Shown in pieces: positions 1,024 through 56,290 of a stretch of DNA of 64,000 nt. Position 1 is the first letter of the stretch, and every line of letters starts with the position of its first letter. Below the pieces are notes generated by a model. That model was not told where the DNA came from and searched no databases. It saw only the letters and a program-made list of their open reading frames with translations. Source of the stretch: Euprymna scolopes. Lineage: Eukaryota. Made by a program: the position numbers and the translations under genes. The stretch is from the NCBI GenBank assembly GCA_053919585.1, contig CM132807.1. One strand, 5' to 3'.

Positions 1024-2675
1024 CAGTTGTGCGCAAAAGTATTCGACCCCTACCAAAATTGTCTTATTTCTTTGAATGGATACTTCAATAATCTTTAAAA
1101 CCTTCTTTAACGACTAAGTTCGAACAAACTGTATAGTTTTCAACAAAAAATAATAAAAAGTAATTAGTGCTTGATAATATAAATAAATTTATTTACAAAA
1201 ATGAAAAATATGGATGTTGCAAAAGTATTCGACCCCTTTTCATTAATACTTGGTTGAGGCTCCTTTGACCTTGATTACTCCAAGTAAACGTTTCCTATAA
1301 CATCTAACGAGACTTCTACATCTGTCCACTGGAATTTTAAGCCACTCTTCTTGCCAGTACTGTTTTAATTCAATCAAATTAGATGGTTTTCTTTTATGTA
1401 CCGCAATTTTTAAATCATGCCATAAGTGCTCAATCGGATTAAGATCTGGAGAGTGGGAAGGCCATTCTAGAACTTTCACCTTATTATTCTTTAACCATGC
1501 CTTAGTGCTCTTTGAAGTGTGTTTAGGATCGTTGTCCTGTTGAAAGGTATACCTCCTTCCATGCCTCAACTGCTTCGCAGACGGAACAAGATTTTCTTTC
1601 AGTATGGACTGATATTTTACTGAATCCATTCTTCCATCGATTATGGTTAATCTTCCAGTTCCATTTATACTGAAACAGCCCCACACCATGATTGATCCAC
1701 CTCCATGCTTAACGGTTGGAATGGTATTCTTCACATTATAAGCAGTATTTTCTTTTCGACAAACATAGCGTTGCTGGTTGCGTCCAAATAGTTCCACTTT
1801 CGTTTCCTCTGACCAAATTATATTATTCCAGTAATTAGTAGGCATTTCTAGGAACGTTTTTGCAAAATTTAATCGAGCCTTTTGATGAGCTTTGGAAAGT
1901 AAGGGCTTCCTTCTGGCAATACGTCCATGCAATCCGGCACGATTTAATGCCCTACGAATAGTTGACAAGTGTACATCTGAGCCAGCATTCTTCAAATCGT
2001 TCTGCACGTCCTTTAGGTTAGATTTAGAGTCTATTGAAACTTGTCTAACAATTTTCCTAGCCCCACGTGTCGTAATTTTTCTTGGACGACCTGATCTTGG
2101 AAGACTTGATACAATCCCTTTTACTTTCCATTTTTTGATAATGGACATAATAGTCGACCGTGGTATAGAAAAACGTTTGGAAATTTTTTTATAACCTTCT
2201 CCAGACTGGTAGGCATCGATTACTTTCTTTTTAATATCTTCAGAGTACTCCTTGTTCTTTGTCATAGTTGCAGATTTGTTGACGTTGAAAAAGAATTTTT
2301 TTTTACTTGAAACAATTATTCAATCATTCAATATGGCATTGAAGTTCAATTTGCACTAATTTTAGATTCAGTACAGTCATAAATATTATTTATAGGAAAT
2401 AAATACAAGGTCAGACTAAAATAATAAACTTAATGACGCTTTTATTTAAACTTTAAATTAAAGGGGCCGAATATTTTTTAAACATCCATATTTATATTTT
2501 TTGTAAATAAATTGATATATATTATTAATCTCGAATTACTTTTCCTCATTTATTGTTGAAAAATATACAATTTATTCATAATTAGCCGTTAAAAGGCATT
2601 GTGAAGATTTTTGAAGTATAGATTCAACGAAACAAGAAAATTTAGACAGGGGTCGAATATTTTTGCGCACGACTG
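1024..2675 (-). mobile_element. Full-length Tc1-family DNA transposon with long IR/DR-type inverted repeats
   Basis: Left end TA|CAGTTGTGCGCAAAAGTATTCGACCCC (1024) mirrors right end GGGGTCGAATATTTTTGCGCACGACTG|TA (2675). TA target duplication. Inner copies of the terminal motif at ~1219-1238 and ~2461-2480 give IRs of ~215 bp. Transposase ORF inside. Confidence 0.95.
1243..2265 (-). CDS. Tc1 transposase (340 aa, DD34E-type; first catalytic D replaced by E)
   Basis: N-terminal HTH region with GRPRK linker, KHGGGSIMVWGCFS, FQQDNDPKH, then SPDLNPIE with 34 residues between D and E. WSEETK occurs where the family has WSDE. Confidence 0.93.
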   Translation of the reverse strand: MTKNKEYSEDIKKKVIDAYQSGEGYKKISKRFSIPRSTIMSIIKKWKVKGIVSSLPRSGRPRKITTRGARKIVRQVSIDSKSNLKDVQNDLKNAGSDVHLSTIRRALNRAGLHGRIARRKPLLSKAHQKARLNFAKTFLEMPTNYWNNIIWSEETKVELFGRNQQRYVCRKENTAYNVKNTIPTVKHGGGSIMVWGCFSINGTGRLTIIDGRMDSVKYQSILKENLVPSAKQLRHGRRYTFQQDNDPKHTSKSTKAWLKNNKVKVLEWPSHSPDLNPIEHLWHDLKIAVHKRKPSNLIELKQYWQEEWLKIPVDRCRSLVRCYRKRLLGVIKVKGASTKY

Positions 2676-39833: not shown

Positions 39834-39879
<46 letters not shown>

Positions 39880-39902
39880 TTTTTTTTTACTATAATAAAT
39901 AA

Positions 39903-39955
39903 ATACTTATGGACACTAGTGTTTCATCCTTTCGGTAATCTTCAGTGCAAGGTGT
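39903..39955 (-). ncRNA. Type I hammerhead ribozyme (downstream copy)
   Basis: CTTGCA-CTGAAGA-TTACCGAAAGGAT-GAAAC-ACTAGT-GTC-CATAAG. Core intact; two proximal stem I mismatches. Confidence 0.75.
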
Positions 39956-40246
39956 CACGATTAACACCAGTCGAACGATTCGAACCCCGCAACACGAGAC
40001 ATCTCTGGCTCGGTTAGCAAAGACCGTATCAATTCGGCTAACATTAACTGCGTGAAATAACATTGAATTTAAACATTTTAATTTTAAATGTTCATTTAGG
40101 TCAGTCAGACAGTGATCTAATCGTTATACGATGATCTATACATAAGAGCTAAACTGATCGACTTTAATTCAACTGAAAGTGCTCAACGATAAGAAACGAA
40201 TTTCTTAAAGGGGCTGTCATAATCATTTTTTTACTATAATAATTAA

Positions 40247-40299
40247 ATACTTACAGACACTAGTGTTTCATCCCTTCGGGAATCTTCAGTGCAGGGTAT
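40247..40299 (-). ncRNA. Type I hammerhead ribozyme (upstream copy)
   Basis: ATACCCTGCA-CTGAAGA-TTCCCGAAGGGAT-GAAAC-ACTAGT-GTC-TGTAAGTAT: stem I UGCA/UGUA plus AUAC/GUAU, stem II UCCC/GGGA, palindromic stem III, GUC site (cut between 40256 and 40255). Confidence 0.85.
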
Positions 40300-40387
40300 C
40301 ACGATTAACACCAGTCGAACGATTCGAACCCCGCTAATATATATATATATAAAGTTCACTTAATAAATAAAATAATGCATCACTTAC

Positions 40388-40497
40388 TTCAAATTTGCCG
40401 ACAAAGCAAGTTGAGTAATTCGTCCATTGCTCGTTTGTTTCTGGATGAGTGGCCCATGTAGCATTCTTACGGCAAATGTTCGTCACATAAATTCCCT
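40388..40497 (-). CDS. Class B GPCR (calcitonin-receptor-like) exon, end of the hormone-binding domain
   Basis: tttccttttgtag|...|gtaagt boundaries. 110 bp, phase 1 to 0, in frame with the upstream exon: (E)GIYVTNICRKNATWATHPETNEQWTNYSTCFVGKFE, matching C...W..HP.....W.NY..C of calcitonin-type receptors. Confidence 0.92.
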
Positions 40498-54886: not shown

Positions 54887-56290
54887 ATTTTCACCCCAAA
54901 CAAGGCACATTGCCACTTTGTTGTAAGGGGCTACTATCAGGGGCATAAGCATCAGGGGTACTGTGTAGGAAGTTGGGCAGCAAGATGTCGGTTCACGTTG
55001 CACTTGAACTTCTGCACGTCAGTACAGTCGGGGAAGCAGGAACCCGGAAGGGAATTCCAAAGTCTAGCTGTTCTGGGGAAGAAATTACTGGAGTAGAAAG
55101 CTCTCTTGCATCTATGGATCTCTACTGTGAAGGGGTGGGATTTAGCTGGTTGTCGGATTTGTCGGGGGTATTTACGTCGAGGGGGCACAAGTGCTTGCAG
55201 TTTGTCAGATCATTCACCGTTAAAGTACTTGTAGAACAGGCAGAGAGATGCAACATTTCGTCGATGTGACAGAGGCTGAAGTTTAGCTGACAATTCAGGA
55301 CCTATCAGATTGGCGACTCTTTTGAACTTTGTCTAGGAGCGAGAGACTAGTGGCAGATGCACCAACCCAAATGTGGCAACAATACTCCATGCATGGGCGA
55401 ATGGTGGCCTTATGGAGATATAGGATACTGTCAGGCGTTAATAGCTTTTTAGCACGGTAGAGAGAACCCACCTTCTTCGCAGCGGTCCTGGCAATGTTCT
55501 CAATGTAATTTTTCCAATTCATGTTTCCTGTGAACGTTAGGCCAAGGAGTTTAAAAGATGTACTTTCAGATAAAGAGTCTTTGGCCATTGCTATTGGCGG
55601 TAGGGAAGGTTTCTTATAATTATTGAAGAAAACAAGTTTAGTCTTGGCATCATTAAGGTGATCATCAATTTTTGTCCCCATTCCACTACGGATCGGATGT
55701 CTTCCTCTAGTGTGTCTGCCATTTCTTTAGATATATGTTCATTTGTGTTCCTGTCGTGTCTGTTATAGAGCATGGTGTCGTCAGCATACATACCCATCTC
55801 ATAGACAATTTTGTCAGGGAGGTCATTTTTGCATATTAGGAATAACAGAGGTCCAAAGATAGACCCCTGAGACACTCCCGCATTTATATCATATTGTTTA
55901 GATGTACGACCGTCAAGGACAACCTGGATTTTTCTCTTATCTAAGAAGGATCTAATTATGTTATGCATTTTTCCAGTGATGCCGTATGATCTGATTTTCT
56001 TGAGAAGACCCTCATGCCATACCCTGTCAAAAGCCTTAGATATATCTAGAACCACCGCTCTACTCTCCCCCCGCTTTGTCCAGTGACGTACATTCTGAGA
56101 TTACAGTTAGGATGTCTGCTGTGGAAGGAGCTTGCCTAAATCCATATTGTTGGTCAGTTTAGCATCTGTAAGACTAGAGCTTGGTTAATTACGGTCTCAA
56201 ATATTTTGGCGAAAGTGGGAGGAGGCTAATGGTCCGATAATTCTTTCGCCAGAATTCTTGAAAACTGGAACTACAGAAGCAGCATTATTA
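54887..56290 (-). mobile_element. 5'-truncated CR1/Jockey-group LINE (RT and C-terminus, frameshifted)
   Basis: LDISKAFDRVWH, GVSQGSIFGPLLF, MYADDT, RPCMEYCCHIW and FFPRTARLWNSLP across three overlapping ORFs. Confidence 0.92.

What the first reader, a model, noticed from the sequence alone, without database searches (positions are those of the whole stretch)
39878..40334. tRNA-headed, double-hammerhead retrozyme-like element beside a GPCR exon
Seen: on the minus strand, two type I hammerheads (CUGAAGA / GAAAC-ACUAGU-GUC) with cleavage sites 344 nt apart (40256/40255 and 39912/39911) inside ~110-bp direct repeats. Between them is a tRNA-Ser-like segment: A box TAGCCGAATTG (~40030-40040), TGCTAA loop, GAGA-TG-TCTC arm, B box GGTTCGAATC (39978-39987). 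The unit is inserted in (TA)n. Established: metazoan non-LTR retrozymes and satellite-like hammerhead repeats (newt satellite 2, schistosome Sm-alpha) are short tandem type I hammerhead units that yield monomeric or circular RNAs, and palindromic stem III permits dimeric folding. Inference: this is a non-coding, probably Pol III-driven, self-processing retroelement family that could release a ~344-nt (circular) RNA and be mobilised by Penelope RT. I cannot tell whether this family is already catalogued.
Basis: partly seen in the sequence, partly recalled or inferred. Interest (0 to 1): 0.88.

Follow-up and report, generated by a model that had tools for sequence, protein, structure and literature searches.

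The report
Decayed hammerhead retroelement copy in (TA)n
This is an old, mutated copy of a non-coding mobile repeat found thousands of times in a large mollusc genome. It carries tRNA-gene-like promoter boxes and a hammerhead self-cleaving ribozyme motif, so it is a further example of the known animal "retrozyme" or schistosome Sm-alpha type, not a new kind of element.

Summary
The two hammerheads of this copy are mutated, and no tRNA tool calls the tRNA-like part at its normal settings.

**What it is.** Window 39873-40334 (minus strand) holds 1.3 units of a 344-nt non-coding repeat. It lies in a (TA)n tract, 53 nt inside an intron of a class-B GPCR gene.

**Family.**
- The copies examined, on many chromosomes of this 5.9-Gb mollusc genome, end at the same 3' point, ...TAATTAT(AT)n, and have ragged 5' ends.
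- Exact-pattern counts give 2,180 intact 46-nt hammerheads.
- The 3' half of the hammerhead occurs 18,956 times and is shared with sister families.
- About one insertion in ten has two hammerheads, as this one does.

**Hammerhead.** The family consensus has a full catalytic core, a 6-bp helix I and a palindromic helix III that favours a double hammerhead. It has U·U in place of the usual G10.1-C11.1 pair and scores below Rfam's cut-off.

**Promoter boxes.** The A and B boxes are non-random (1 of 50,000 shuffles). A tRNA-Ser identity is not supported.

**RNA evidence.** PolyA RNA-seq shows no ends at the predicted cleavage sites and no unit-length circle junction.

**Mobilisation.** Penelope-like elements of the same genome also end in (TA)n but share no sequence with this repeat.

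**Verdict.** This is a new member of a known kind. The scan had already found sister families (321, 337 and 343 bp) elsewhere in this genome.

The parts
39873..40334 (-). Whole insertion: 1.3 units of the 344-nt repeat, with a 5'-truncated upstream unit and one complete downstream unit
   Evidence: 100% self-hit and 92-94% identity to copies on many chromosomes. The 3' end ...TAATTAT is followed by (AT)n, as in the other copies.
40250..40295 (-). Upstream hammerhead motif (helix I 5' strand, CUGAAGA, helix II, GAAAC-ACUAGU-GUC, helix I 3' strand). Predicted cleavage between 40256 and 40255. One helix I mismatch.
   Evidence: No Rfam hit at E<=10.
39906..39951 (-). Downstream hammerhead motif. 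Predicted cleavage between 39912 and 39911. Helix II is damaged (C>A) and two helix I positions are unpaired.
   Evidence: Family reads carry the consensus letters at 39936, 39950, 39911, 39910 and 39907.
39964..40046 (-). tRNA-like module with a long variable arm. A-box-like 40030-40040, B-box 39977-39986.
   Evidence: ARAGORN only at 80% threshold; A..B pair in 1 of 50,000 shuffles; no tRNA call at normal settings.
40047..40218 (-). AT-rich 'body' of the unit, with no recognisable feature and no coding capacity seen
   Evidence: A 22-mer of the body occurs 2,139 times in the genome.
40219..40255 (-). Internal copy of the 37-nt A/T-rich tail that follows the cleavage site. In terminal position this tail is the fixed 3' end of the family.
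   Evidence: 3' ends of the copies examined. loose end at 40219 running into (TA)n.
39873..39911 (-). Terminal tail of this copy, ending ...AAATAATTAT
39836..39872 (.). (TA)n microsatellite at the 3' junction
40335..40352 (.). (TA)n remnant at the 5' junction
40388..40497 (-). Host exon ending a hormone-receptor (HRM) domain of a class-B GPCR. The 5' splice site GT is at 40386-40387. The element starts 53 nt into the intron, in the gene's orientation.
   Evidence: translation, AG/GT borders. (upstream ORF 43006-43752 matches Pfam HRM, E 2.3e-9).

Best explanation
The stretch is a dead insertion of a non-autonomous retroelement family with a 344-nt unit.

**Unit order.** 37-nt A/T-rich tail, about 170-nt body, tRNA-derived module with Pol III A and B boxes, type I hammerhead.

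**How copies were made (inferred).** Target-primed reverse transcription at nicked (TA)n tracts copied an RNA longer than one unit, either a multimeric transcript or a circle copied round and round. Priming on the ...UAAUUAU tail gives every copy the same 3' end. Premature stops, joined at TA microhomologies, give ragged 5' ends, so copies look like partial tandems whose upstream unit is truncated.

**Likely enzyme source (inferred).** A Penelope-like element. This genome's Penelope-like elements also end in (TA)n and form the same layouts.

**Role of the hammerhead (inferred).** It probably acts as a dimer through its palindromic helix III and would cut multimeric transcripts after GUC into unit-length RNA. 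Cutting and circularisation are not shown here.

**This copy.** It is about 6% diverged and has lost pairing in both hammerheads and one A-box position, so it is very unlikely to release anything.
For: **Dispersed family.**
- The 453-nt query gives 7,117 first-look candidates. The 40 scored are 90-94% identical and lie on many chromosomes.
- Exact-match whole-genome counts, each with zero hits for the reversed control:

| Pattern | Count |
|---|---|
| 46-nt consensus hammerhead | 2,180 |
| Hammerhead 5' half (22-mer) | 5,277 |
| Body (22-mer) | 2,139 |
| Hammerhead 3' half (22-mer) | 18,956 |

**Retroposition signature.**
- In 27 independent loci nearly all copies end at the same point followed by (AT)n. 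Three end a few bases short or are followed by unique sequence.
- Their 5' ends fall at varied positions, giving 1.3 to 3.2 units. The 5' flank is usually (TA)n, (GA)n or (GT)n.
- Internal unit junctions carry no (TA)n.

**Hammerhead.**
- The consensus has the full core, helix I CCUGCA/UGUAGG and helix III ACA/UGU within the palindrome ACACUAGUGU.
- Rfam Hammerhead_1 aligns it end to end at 22.3 bits, E 0.013.
- Two copies cofold into a double hammerhead at -29.0 kcal/mol, against -8.7 kcal/mol for each monomer.
- The common family variant in the core lies at N7, the one free position: CUGAAGA versus CUGAUGA (places 40285 and 39941).

**Pol III features.**
- An A..B box pair at class-II spacing arises in 1 of 50,000 shuffles.
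- Genome-wide the A box reads TAGCCGAATGG in 88 of 100 listed copies.
- There are 16 TTTT against 177 expected in 16.5 kb of copies.

**Penelope link.**
- Every Penelope-like family examined ends in (TA)n. The main one carries its own minimal hammerhead-like motif.
- Tail-to-tail inverted arrangements occur across a shared (TA)n (L026; L046).
- Partial tandems, a (TA)n bias and retrozymes riding on Penelope-like elements are described in PMC8557442, PMC4209133, PMC7229834 and the preprint 10.64898/2026.07.22.740005.
Against: - No sequence similarity between the unit and 30 resident Penelope-like loci, so the partner is not identified.
- Helix II closes with U·U instead of the highly conserved G10.1-C11.1 pair (PMC4209133). 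All Rfam scores are below the gathering score of 34.
- The monomer's lowest-energy fold is not the hammerhead fold and is no more stable than shuffles.
- PolyA RNA-seq gives only a few hundred family reads per run, on both strands. Of these, 70-82% run on into unrelated sequence. No ends pile up at 40255/40256 or 39911/39912, and reads cross the cleavage site freely.
- Genomic 5' ends that abut (TA)n are only about twice as common at the cleavage site (150 matches) as at control positions 8 to 24 nt away (60, 63 and about 96 unique). All sit at TA microhomologies.
- No significant covariation within the family: 94.7% of cells paired against 94.4% in shuffles. The family is too young for this test to decide anything.
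- By adjacency of exact matches, only about 10% of insertions have two hammerheads.
Confidence: 0.75

Rival explanations
1. It is a classical Pol III SINE. Each copy derives from a transcript that starts at the tRNA-like head and is mobilised by a LINE that recognises the (TA)n tail. The hammerhead is a passenger.
For: - The A and B boxes are non-random.
- The sense strand is almost free of TTTT.
- LINE reverse-transcriptase fragments are present in the window.
- The tRNA-like module travels with the hammerhead in sister families.
Against: - Copies extend upstream of the tRNA-like head into the body and into further units. None of 27 sampled 5' ends lies at the expected start, just upstream of the A box.
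- The pre-tRNA 22-mer is still abundant, at 2,236 exact copies.
- No LINE with this tail was identified.
- Partial tandems and inverted tail-to-tail pairs are Penelope-type layouts (PMC8557442).
Confidence: 0.12
2. It is a minisatellite that grew by unequal crossing-over or replication slippage. The hammerhead and tRNA resemblances have no function.
For: - The units are head-to-tail.
- The region is AT-rich and microsatellite-rich.
- There is no covariation.
Against: - Thousands of short arrays lie on many chromosomes. The sampled arrays share one 3' end and have different flanks.
- The hammerhead core is complete in the consensus and is aligned end to end by Rfam.
- The A..B pair arises in 1 of 50,000 shuffles.
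Confidence: 0.03
3. The family is still an active retrozyme in the strict sense. Hammerhead-cut unit RNAs are ligated into 344-nt circles, and these circles are the templates of rolling-circle reverse transcription.
For: - Arrays of up to 3.2 units have seamless internal junctions and a 3' end that lies inside the unit, 37 nt past the cleavage site. Priming on a circle would give exactly this.
- There is a twofold excess of 5' ends at the cleavage site.
- Run X1 holds the family at very high depth, with one contig joined across 343 nt. X1 may be DNA rather than RNA.
- Circles were shown for mussel, coral and axolotl retrozymes (PMC7229834).
Against: - No circle-specific or cleavage-specific signal appears in three polyA RNA-seq runs.
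- The back-joint of 343 nt is equally expected from genomic tandems.
- The U·U at 10.1/11.1 may weaken catalysis.
- Copies differ from one another by about 5%, so the family looks old rather than active.
Confidence: 0.25

Closest known systems
Metazoan non-LTR retrozymes (mussel, coral, axolotl; Cervera and de la Pena 2020, PMC7229834)
   Same: - Short (170-400 nt), low-GC, non-coding tandem units.
- Each unit holds a type I hammerhead with a weak palindromic helix III.
- Thousands of copies per genome.
- Proposed dependence on Penelope-like elements.
   Different: - This unit carries a tRNA-derived module with A and B boxes just upstream of the ribozyme.
- Helix II closes with U·U.
- Most insertions hold one hammerhead only.
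- No circular or unit-length RNA has been shown.
Sm-alpha / Sj-alpha SINE-like elements of schistosomes (Ferbeyre 1998 and Laha 2000, as cited in PMC2770079)
   Same: - A unit of about 330 nt that combines a tRNA-derived Pol III head with a type I hammerhead.
- More than 10,000 copies.
- The helix II sequence (UCC...GGA) is close to the Rfam type I consensus, which includes schistosome sequences.
   Different: - A different phylum and a different tRNA-like head. Sm-alpha heads are called as tRNA-Gln by tRNAscan, whereas this head is not called by any tool at normal settings.
- Sm-alpha hammerheads pass Rfam and cleave in vitro.
- The (TA)n targeting and partial-tandem layout seen here are Penelope-like features.
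Minimal hammerheads in the terminal repeats of Penelope-like elements (Cervera and de la Pena 2014, PMC4209133; Craig et al. 2021, PMC8557442)
   Same: - A hammerhead in a repeat created by a 5'-truncated upstream copy.
- A palindromic 15.2-16.2 pair and loop 3, implying action as a dimer.
- Insertion into microsatellites.
- Inverted tail-to-tail pairs.
   Different: - No reverse transcriptase or endonuclease ORF.
- No sequence similarity to this genome's Penelope-like tails.
- The G10.1-C11.1 pair, conserved in those motifs, is absent.
Newt satellite 2 hammerhead repeats
   Same: About 330-nt units with a type I hammerhead that needs a dimer (established knowledge; cited in PMC7229834).
   Different: Newt repeats form longer tandem arrays and have no tRNA-like module. 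Here the copies are short, dispersed and 5'-truncated.

Membership tests
Hammerhead ribozyme, type I (Rfam RF00163) | Conserved core CUGANGA ... GAAA ... UH with helix I open | tested here: met
   Both window motifs and the family consensus carry CUGAAGA, GAAA and GUC in the right order.
Hammerhead ribozyme, type I (Rfam RF00163) | Three helices pair around the core | tested here: met
   Met for the family consensus: helix I 6 bp, helix II 3 bp, helix III 3 bp, with 94.7% of cells paired in 33 copies. In the window, the upstream motif has one helix I mismatch and the downstream motif has helix I and helix II damage.
Hammerhead ribozyme, type I (Rfam RF00163) | G10.1-C11.1 pair closing helix II | tested here: not met
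   U·U in the aligned copies, except one with U·C, and marked non-standard by cmscan.
Hammerhead ribozyme, type I (Rfam RF00163) | Score at or above Rfam's gathering score (34 bits) | tested here: not met
   Best 22.3 bits on an intact family copy. Nothing at E<=10 on the window copies.
Hammerhead ribozyme, type I (Rfam RF00163) | Self-cleavage after H17 | tested here: inconclusive
   No pile-up of RNA ends at the sites in polyA RNA-seq. Genomic 5' ends at the site are only about twice the controls. This needs a bench assay.
Metazoan non-LTR retrozyme | Non-coding tandem units of 170-400 nt, low GC, each with a type I hammerhead | tested here: met
   344-nt unit, 37% GC, arrays of 1.3-3.2 units. 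About 10% of insertions have two or more hammerheads.
Metazoan non-LTR retrozyme | Expressed as unit-length linear and circular RNA | tested here: inconclusive
   PolyA libraries show only read-through-like reads. No total-RNA or RNase R data could be laid.
tRNA-derived SINE (Sm-alpha-like) | Internal Pol III A and B boxes at tRNA spacing | tested here: met
   TAGCCGAATGG and GGTTCGAATC are 43 nt apart. Such a pair arises in 1 of 50,000 shuffles. The window copy has a G>T change in the A box.
tRNA-derived SINE (Sm-alpha-like) | Head recognisable as a tRNA | tested here: not met
   No Rfam tRNA hit at E<=10 on 111 nt. ARAGORN calls it only at 80% threshold, with varying anticodons. No similarity beyond the B box to this genome's tRNA-Thr and tRNA-Lys genes. 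No tRNA-Ser gene was available to compare.
tRNA-derived SINE (Sm-alpha-like) | Copies begin at the tRNA-like head (transcription start) | tested here: not met
   None of 27 sampled 5' ends falls there, and copies run on upstream into the body and further units. The sample favours long copies.
Non-autonomous derivative of a Penelope-like element | Partial tandem with a 5'-truncated upstream copy, inverted pairs, microsatellite target | tested here: met
   (arrays; L026 inverted pair). (Penelope-like elements also end in (TA)n). PMC8557442 for the defining layout.
Non-autonomous derivative of a Penelope-like element | Sequence shared with the terminal repeat of a resident autonomous element | tested here: not met
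   blastn with word size 7 found nothing in 30 Penelope-like loci with 1.5-kb flanks. Other families of the roughly 15,000 candidates were not examined.

The most novel reading that the evidence does not exclude
The tRNA-like-plus-hammerhead cassette may be a working, modular 'head' shared by several repeat families, which together account for roughly 30,000 hammerhead copies.

On this reading Pol III transcribes the cassette, the ribozyme trims the RNA, and the tRNA-like fold recruits tRNA-processing or ligating enzymes to make circles that Penelope-type reverse transcriptase copies into (TA)n.

That would be a large, overlooked SINE-like class in a group of genomes reported to have almost no SINEs (PMC13218726). 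This rests on my inference that the genome is a decapodiform cephalopod.
Probability: 0.2. Interest if true: 0.6.

Novelty: new member of a known kind. Interest (0 to 1): 0.3.

Why it matters
It adds a mollusc example to the small set of elements that join a tRNA-type promoter to a hammerhead ribozyme, known so far from schistosomes.

The hammerhead's 3' half occurs about 19,000 times as an exact match, so such elements are abundant in a genome type whose repeats are mostly listed as unclassified.

The family consensus, with its natural U·U at positions 10.1/11.1, is a ready substrate for testing how much that pair matters in a dimeric hammerhead.

This particular copy is a decayed intronic passenger and has no evident effect on its host gene.

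Tried and rejected
- **Rfam on the window:** no hammerhead and no tRNA, at gathering score or at E<=10.
- **Rfam on 20 family loci at once:** the table was swamped by microsatellite look-alikes of miRNA models.
- **Local alignment of the tRNA-like module to this genome's tRNAs:** only Thr and Lys genes had been fetched, and only the B box aligned, no better than shuffles.
- **Fetching tRNA loci:** I switched to exact-pattern counts instead.
- **Fold of the 344-nt unit:** no more stable than shuffles, z = -0.79, so no viroid-like rod is indicated.
- **My first strict hammerhead scan:** it missed the downstream window motif because of its helix II damage.
- **My first A-box regular expression:** it was one base too long and was corrected.
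- **Pattern search of metagenome contigs for the hammerhead 3' half:** no hit.
- **Within-array versus between-array divergence (4.5% against 5.4%):** units of one array are only slightly more alike, which cannot separate a circular from a multimeric template.
- **Covariation:** not significant. The family is too young for the test to count for or against the fold.
- **Footprint of ribozyme-cut RNA at copy 5' ends:** Only a twofold excess over neighbouring TA-microhomology sites was found, so I do not claim it.

Full report
**1. What is in the window.**

On the minus strand, 40334 down to 39873 holds one insertion flanked by (TA)n on both sides. It consists of:
- a partial unit that begins inside a B-box-like GGTTCGAATC;
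- a hammerhead motif;
- a 37-nt A/T-rich stretch;
- a body of about 170 nt;
- a tRNA-like stretch;
- a second hammerhead motif;
- the same A/T-rich stretch again, ending ...TAATTAT and running into (AT)n.

The two 109-nt repeats (39882-39990 and 40226-40334) are 94% identical and 344 nt apart.

The insertion lies 53 nt inside an intron. The exon at 40388-40497 ends a hormone-receptor domain of a class-B GPCR and is followed by GTAAGT. The next ORF upstream matches Pfam HRM. The element has the same orientation as the gene.

**2. Standard detectors.**

Rfam finds nothing in the window at gathering score, and no hammerhead or tRNA at E<=10 around the element. ARAGORN finds no tRNA.

On a better-preserved family copy (L007), Rfam Hammerhead_1 aligns all three tandem motifs from end to end at 22.3, 20.3 and 16.6 bits (E 0.013 to 0.97). 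These scores are below the gathering score of 34, and the pair closing helix II is flagged as non-standard.

The Rfam tRNA model finds nothing, even when given only the 111 nt of the tRNA-like part.

**3. The family.**

The 453-nt query gives 7,117 first-look candidates in the window's own 5.9-Gb assembly. The 40 scored are 90-94% identical and lie on many chromosomes.

In 27 independent loci nearly all copies end at the same point...GTAAAAAAATAATTAT, followed by (AT)n. Three end a few bases short or are followed by unique sequence. The 5' ends fall at varied positions, giving 1.3 to 3.2 units. The 5' flank is usually a microsatellite, and the junction usually sits at a TA-containing site. Internal unit junctions carry no (TA)n.

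This is the signature of target-primed reverse transcription with 5' truncation of a template longer than one unit. It is not the signature of a satellite.

Whole-genome exact-pattern counts, each with zero hits for the reversed control:

| Pattern | Exact copies |
|---|---|
| 46-nt consensus hammerhead | 2,180 |
| Hammerhead 5' half (22-mer) | 5,277 |
| Body (22-mer) | 2,139 |
| Stretch just upstream of the tRNA-like part (22-mer) | 2,236 |
| A-box region (22-mer) | 5,725 |
| Variable-arm region (22-mer) | 8,412 |
| Hammerhead 3' half (22-mer) | 18,956 |

The last three are several times more abundant than the body. Among listed hits they occur at spacings from about 335 to 367 nt. The tRNA-like-plus-hammerhead cassette is therefore shared by sister families with other bodies.

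A second such family, with a different tRNA-like head, turned up by chance next to a Penelope-like tail in L046.

Among the first 100 exact hits, only 6 (46-mer) or 12 (5' half) have a partner about 344 nt away. In my sample a motif is exact with probability 0.31 (46-mer) or 0.61 (5' half). Together these figures suggest that roughly one insertion in ten has two hammerheads, as the window copy does. This is an estimate, not a count.

**4. The hammerhead.**

The family consensus reads:
- helix I: CCUGCA / UGUAGG;
- core: CUGAAGA;
- helix II: UCC / GGA, closed by U·U, with loop CGAAA;
- GAAA;
- helix III: ACA / UGU, inside the ten-base palindrome ACACUAGUGU;
- cleavage triplet: GUC.

The one common family variant inside the core lies at N7, the only free core position: CUGAAGA versus CUGAUGA (places 40285 and 39941).

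As a monomer, the lowest-energy fold is an alternative pairing rather than the hammerhead, and it is no more stable than shuffles. Two copies cofold into the double hammerhead, with a 10-bp intermolecular helix III, at -29.0 kcal/mol against -8.7 for each monomer. This matches what is known for newt, Penelope-like and vertebrate retrozyme hammerheads (PMC4209133, PMC7229834).

Two features argue for caution:
- The G10.1-C11.1 pair, described as highly conserved (PMC4209133), is replaced by U·U.
- There is no significant covariation among 33 distinct copies: 94.7% of cells paired against 94.4% in shuffles, with two double changes. At about 5% pairwise divergence the copies are neutral descendants of one master, so this test cannot decide.

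In the window itself the upstream motif has one helix I mismatch. The downstream motif has a C>A change in helix II and two unpaired helix I positions. Family reads carry the consensus letters at those places.

**5. The tRNA-like part.**

- The pair of an A box (TAGCCGAATGG in 88 of 100 listed genomic copies; GAATTG in the window's subfamily) and a B box (GGTTCGAATC), 43 nt apart, arises in 1 of 50,000 shuffles of the unit. It occurs once in 323 kb of unrelated sequence, and that one case is the L046 sister element.
- At 80% of its threshold, ARAGORN draws a cloverleaf with a long variable arm at the same place in 33 cases over 30 arrays, against 14 in 150 shuffles. The anticodon is called Asp, Asn or Glu, position 33 is not U, and the acceptor and T stems are weak.
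- A tRNA-derived origin is therefore likely, and a Ser identity is not supported.
- The sense strand nearly lacks TTTT: 16 against 177 expected in 16.5 kb of copies, which means none in the consensus. This fits read-through by Pol III but is a single observation.
- None of the 27 sampled 5' ends lies at the expected transcription start.

**6. RNA evidence.**

Three polyA RNA-seq runs of the same species were sampled at about 12% each.
- They give 353 to 515 family reads at 90% likeness, on both strands.
- 70-82% of these reads run on into unrelated sequence.
- Depth is continuous across 40255/40256, and no pile-up of ends is reported at either cleavage site.
- A loose end at 40219 running into (TA)n shows the family's 3' end in transcripts.
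- A back-joint of 203 nt (40248 to 40046), seen in two runs, suggests a relative that lacks the tRNA-hammerhead cassette.

Run X1 holds the family at very high depth, with one contig joined across 343 nt. Its nature (RNA or DNA) is not on record, and it carries tagmentation adaptor sequence (all).

The family is therefore transcribed at least as part of longer RNAs. Nothing shows cleavage or circles. PolyA libraries are poorly suited to show either.

**7. Footprints in the genome.**

I counted copies whose 5' end abuts (TA)4:

| Position of 5' end | Matches |
|---|---|
| At the cleavage site | 150 (some double-counted) |
| 22-24 nt upstream | 60 |
| 6-8 nt upstream | 63 |
| 2-4 nt downstream | 145 (about 96 unique) |

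All classes sit at TA microhomologies. A twofold excess at the cleavage site is suggestive at most.

**8. Who moves it.**

The GIY-YIG search gives 15,395 candidates. Many belong to a young Penelope-like family with open frames of about 806 aa.

That family's 3' region carries a minimal hammerhead-like motif (UUGAAGA, a bulged A, a 5-bp helix II with G-C at 10.1/11.1, then GAAACGUU) and ends in (AT)n. A second Penelope-like family also runs into (TA)n.

The shared target, the partial tandems and the inverted pairs point to Penelope-type integration (PMC8557442, and the preprint 10.64898/2026.07.22.740005 for vertebrates). However, blastn finds no similarity between the unit and these 30 loci. 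The partner is inferred, not shown.

The reverse transcriptase inside the window (55.3-56.1 kb) looks LINE-type.

**9. Comparison and novelty.**

The element works like a metazoan non-LTR retrozyme and like schistosome Sm-alpha, which already joins a tRNA-derived head to a type I hammerhead (PMC2770079).

I found no paper on hammerheads in cephalopods or other large mollusc genomes in the library. One cuttlefish genome paper reports almost no SINEs and many unclassified repeats (PMC13218726). That this genome is a decapodiform cephalopod is my inference from its 5.9 Gb, its chromosome-scale contigs numbered up to at least 46, and the mollusc labels on the runs.

The scan has already met sister families of 321, 337 and 343 bp in this genome and reached the same class.

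**Verdict.** This is a new member of a known kind, and this copy is decayed.

Noticed in passing
L046:2130-2330 (minus strand; G000 C5 near 35.83 Mb): A second, unrelated tRNA-like head (A box TGGCATAACGG, B box GGTTCGAATCC) is followed after 19 nt by CUGAUGA ... GAAAC with a palindromic CACGCGUG. It then runs into (TA)n, which joins tail-to-tail onto the 3' end of a Penelope-like element.
   Followed up: partly
window 40046 / 40248: RNA-seq reads of two runs join 40248 back to 40046 with one extra base (17 reads). This is a 203-nt step that skips exactly the tRNA-like part and the hammerhead. It suggests a relative made of body and tail only.
   Followed up: no
L032-L060 (for example L045, L050): A young Penelope-like family has roughly 806-aa open frames. 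Its 3' region carries several poly(A) runs and a minimal hammerhead-like motif with U instead of C at core position 3, and it ends in (AT)n.
   Followed up: partly
L002:2318-2434 and L014:792-908: 5S rRNA-like sequences score above Rfam's gathering score (65.6 and 75.4 bits) a few hundred bases from two copies of the family. They may be 5S-derived repeats or pseudogenes.
   Followed up: no
G000 contig C11, about 1.68-2.16 Mb (L061-L090): A very large cluster of tRNA genes, almost all tRNA-Thr. ARAGORN tRNAs in 30 overlapping 3-kb loci, 109 of them distinct sequences.
   Followed up: no
L031 (G000 contig C553:29970-33197): The best GIY-YIG hit of the assembly sits on a small unplaced contig and, by my reading of its sequence, resembles a bacterial UvrC-type gene. 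It is possibly symbiont or contaminant DNA.
   Followed up: no
window 1243-2265 (minus strand): An intact 340-aa Tc1/mariner-type transposase ORF (Pfam HTH_Tnp_Tc3_2, Sleeping Beauty HTH and DDE_3).
   Followed up: no
window 55295-56100 (minus strand): Fragments of a LINE-type reverse transcriptase (Pfam RVT_1, E 2.4e-18), broken by frameshifts and next to masked N stretches.
   Followed up: no
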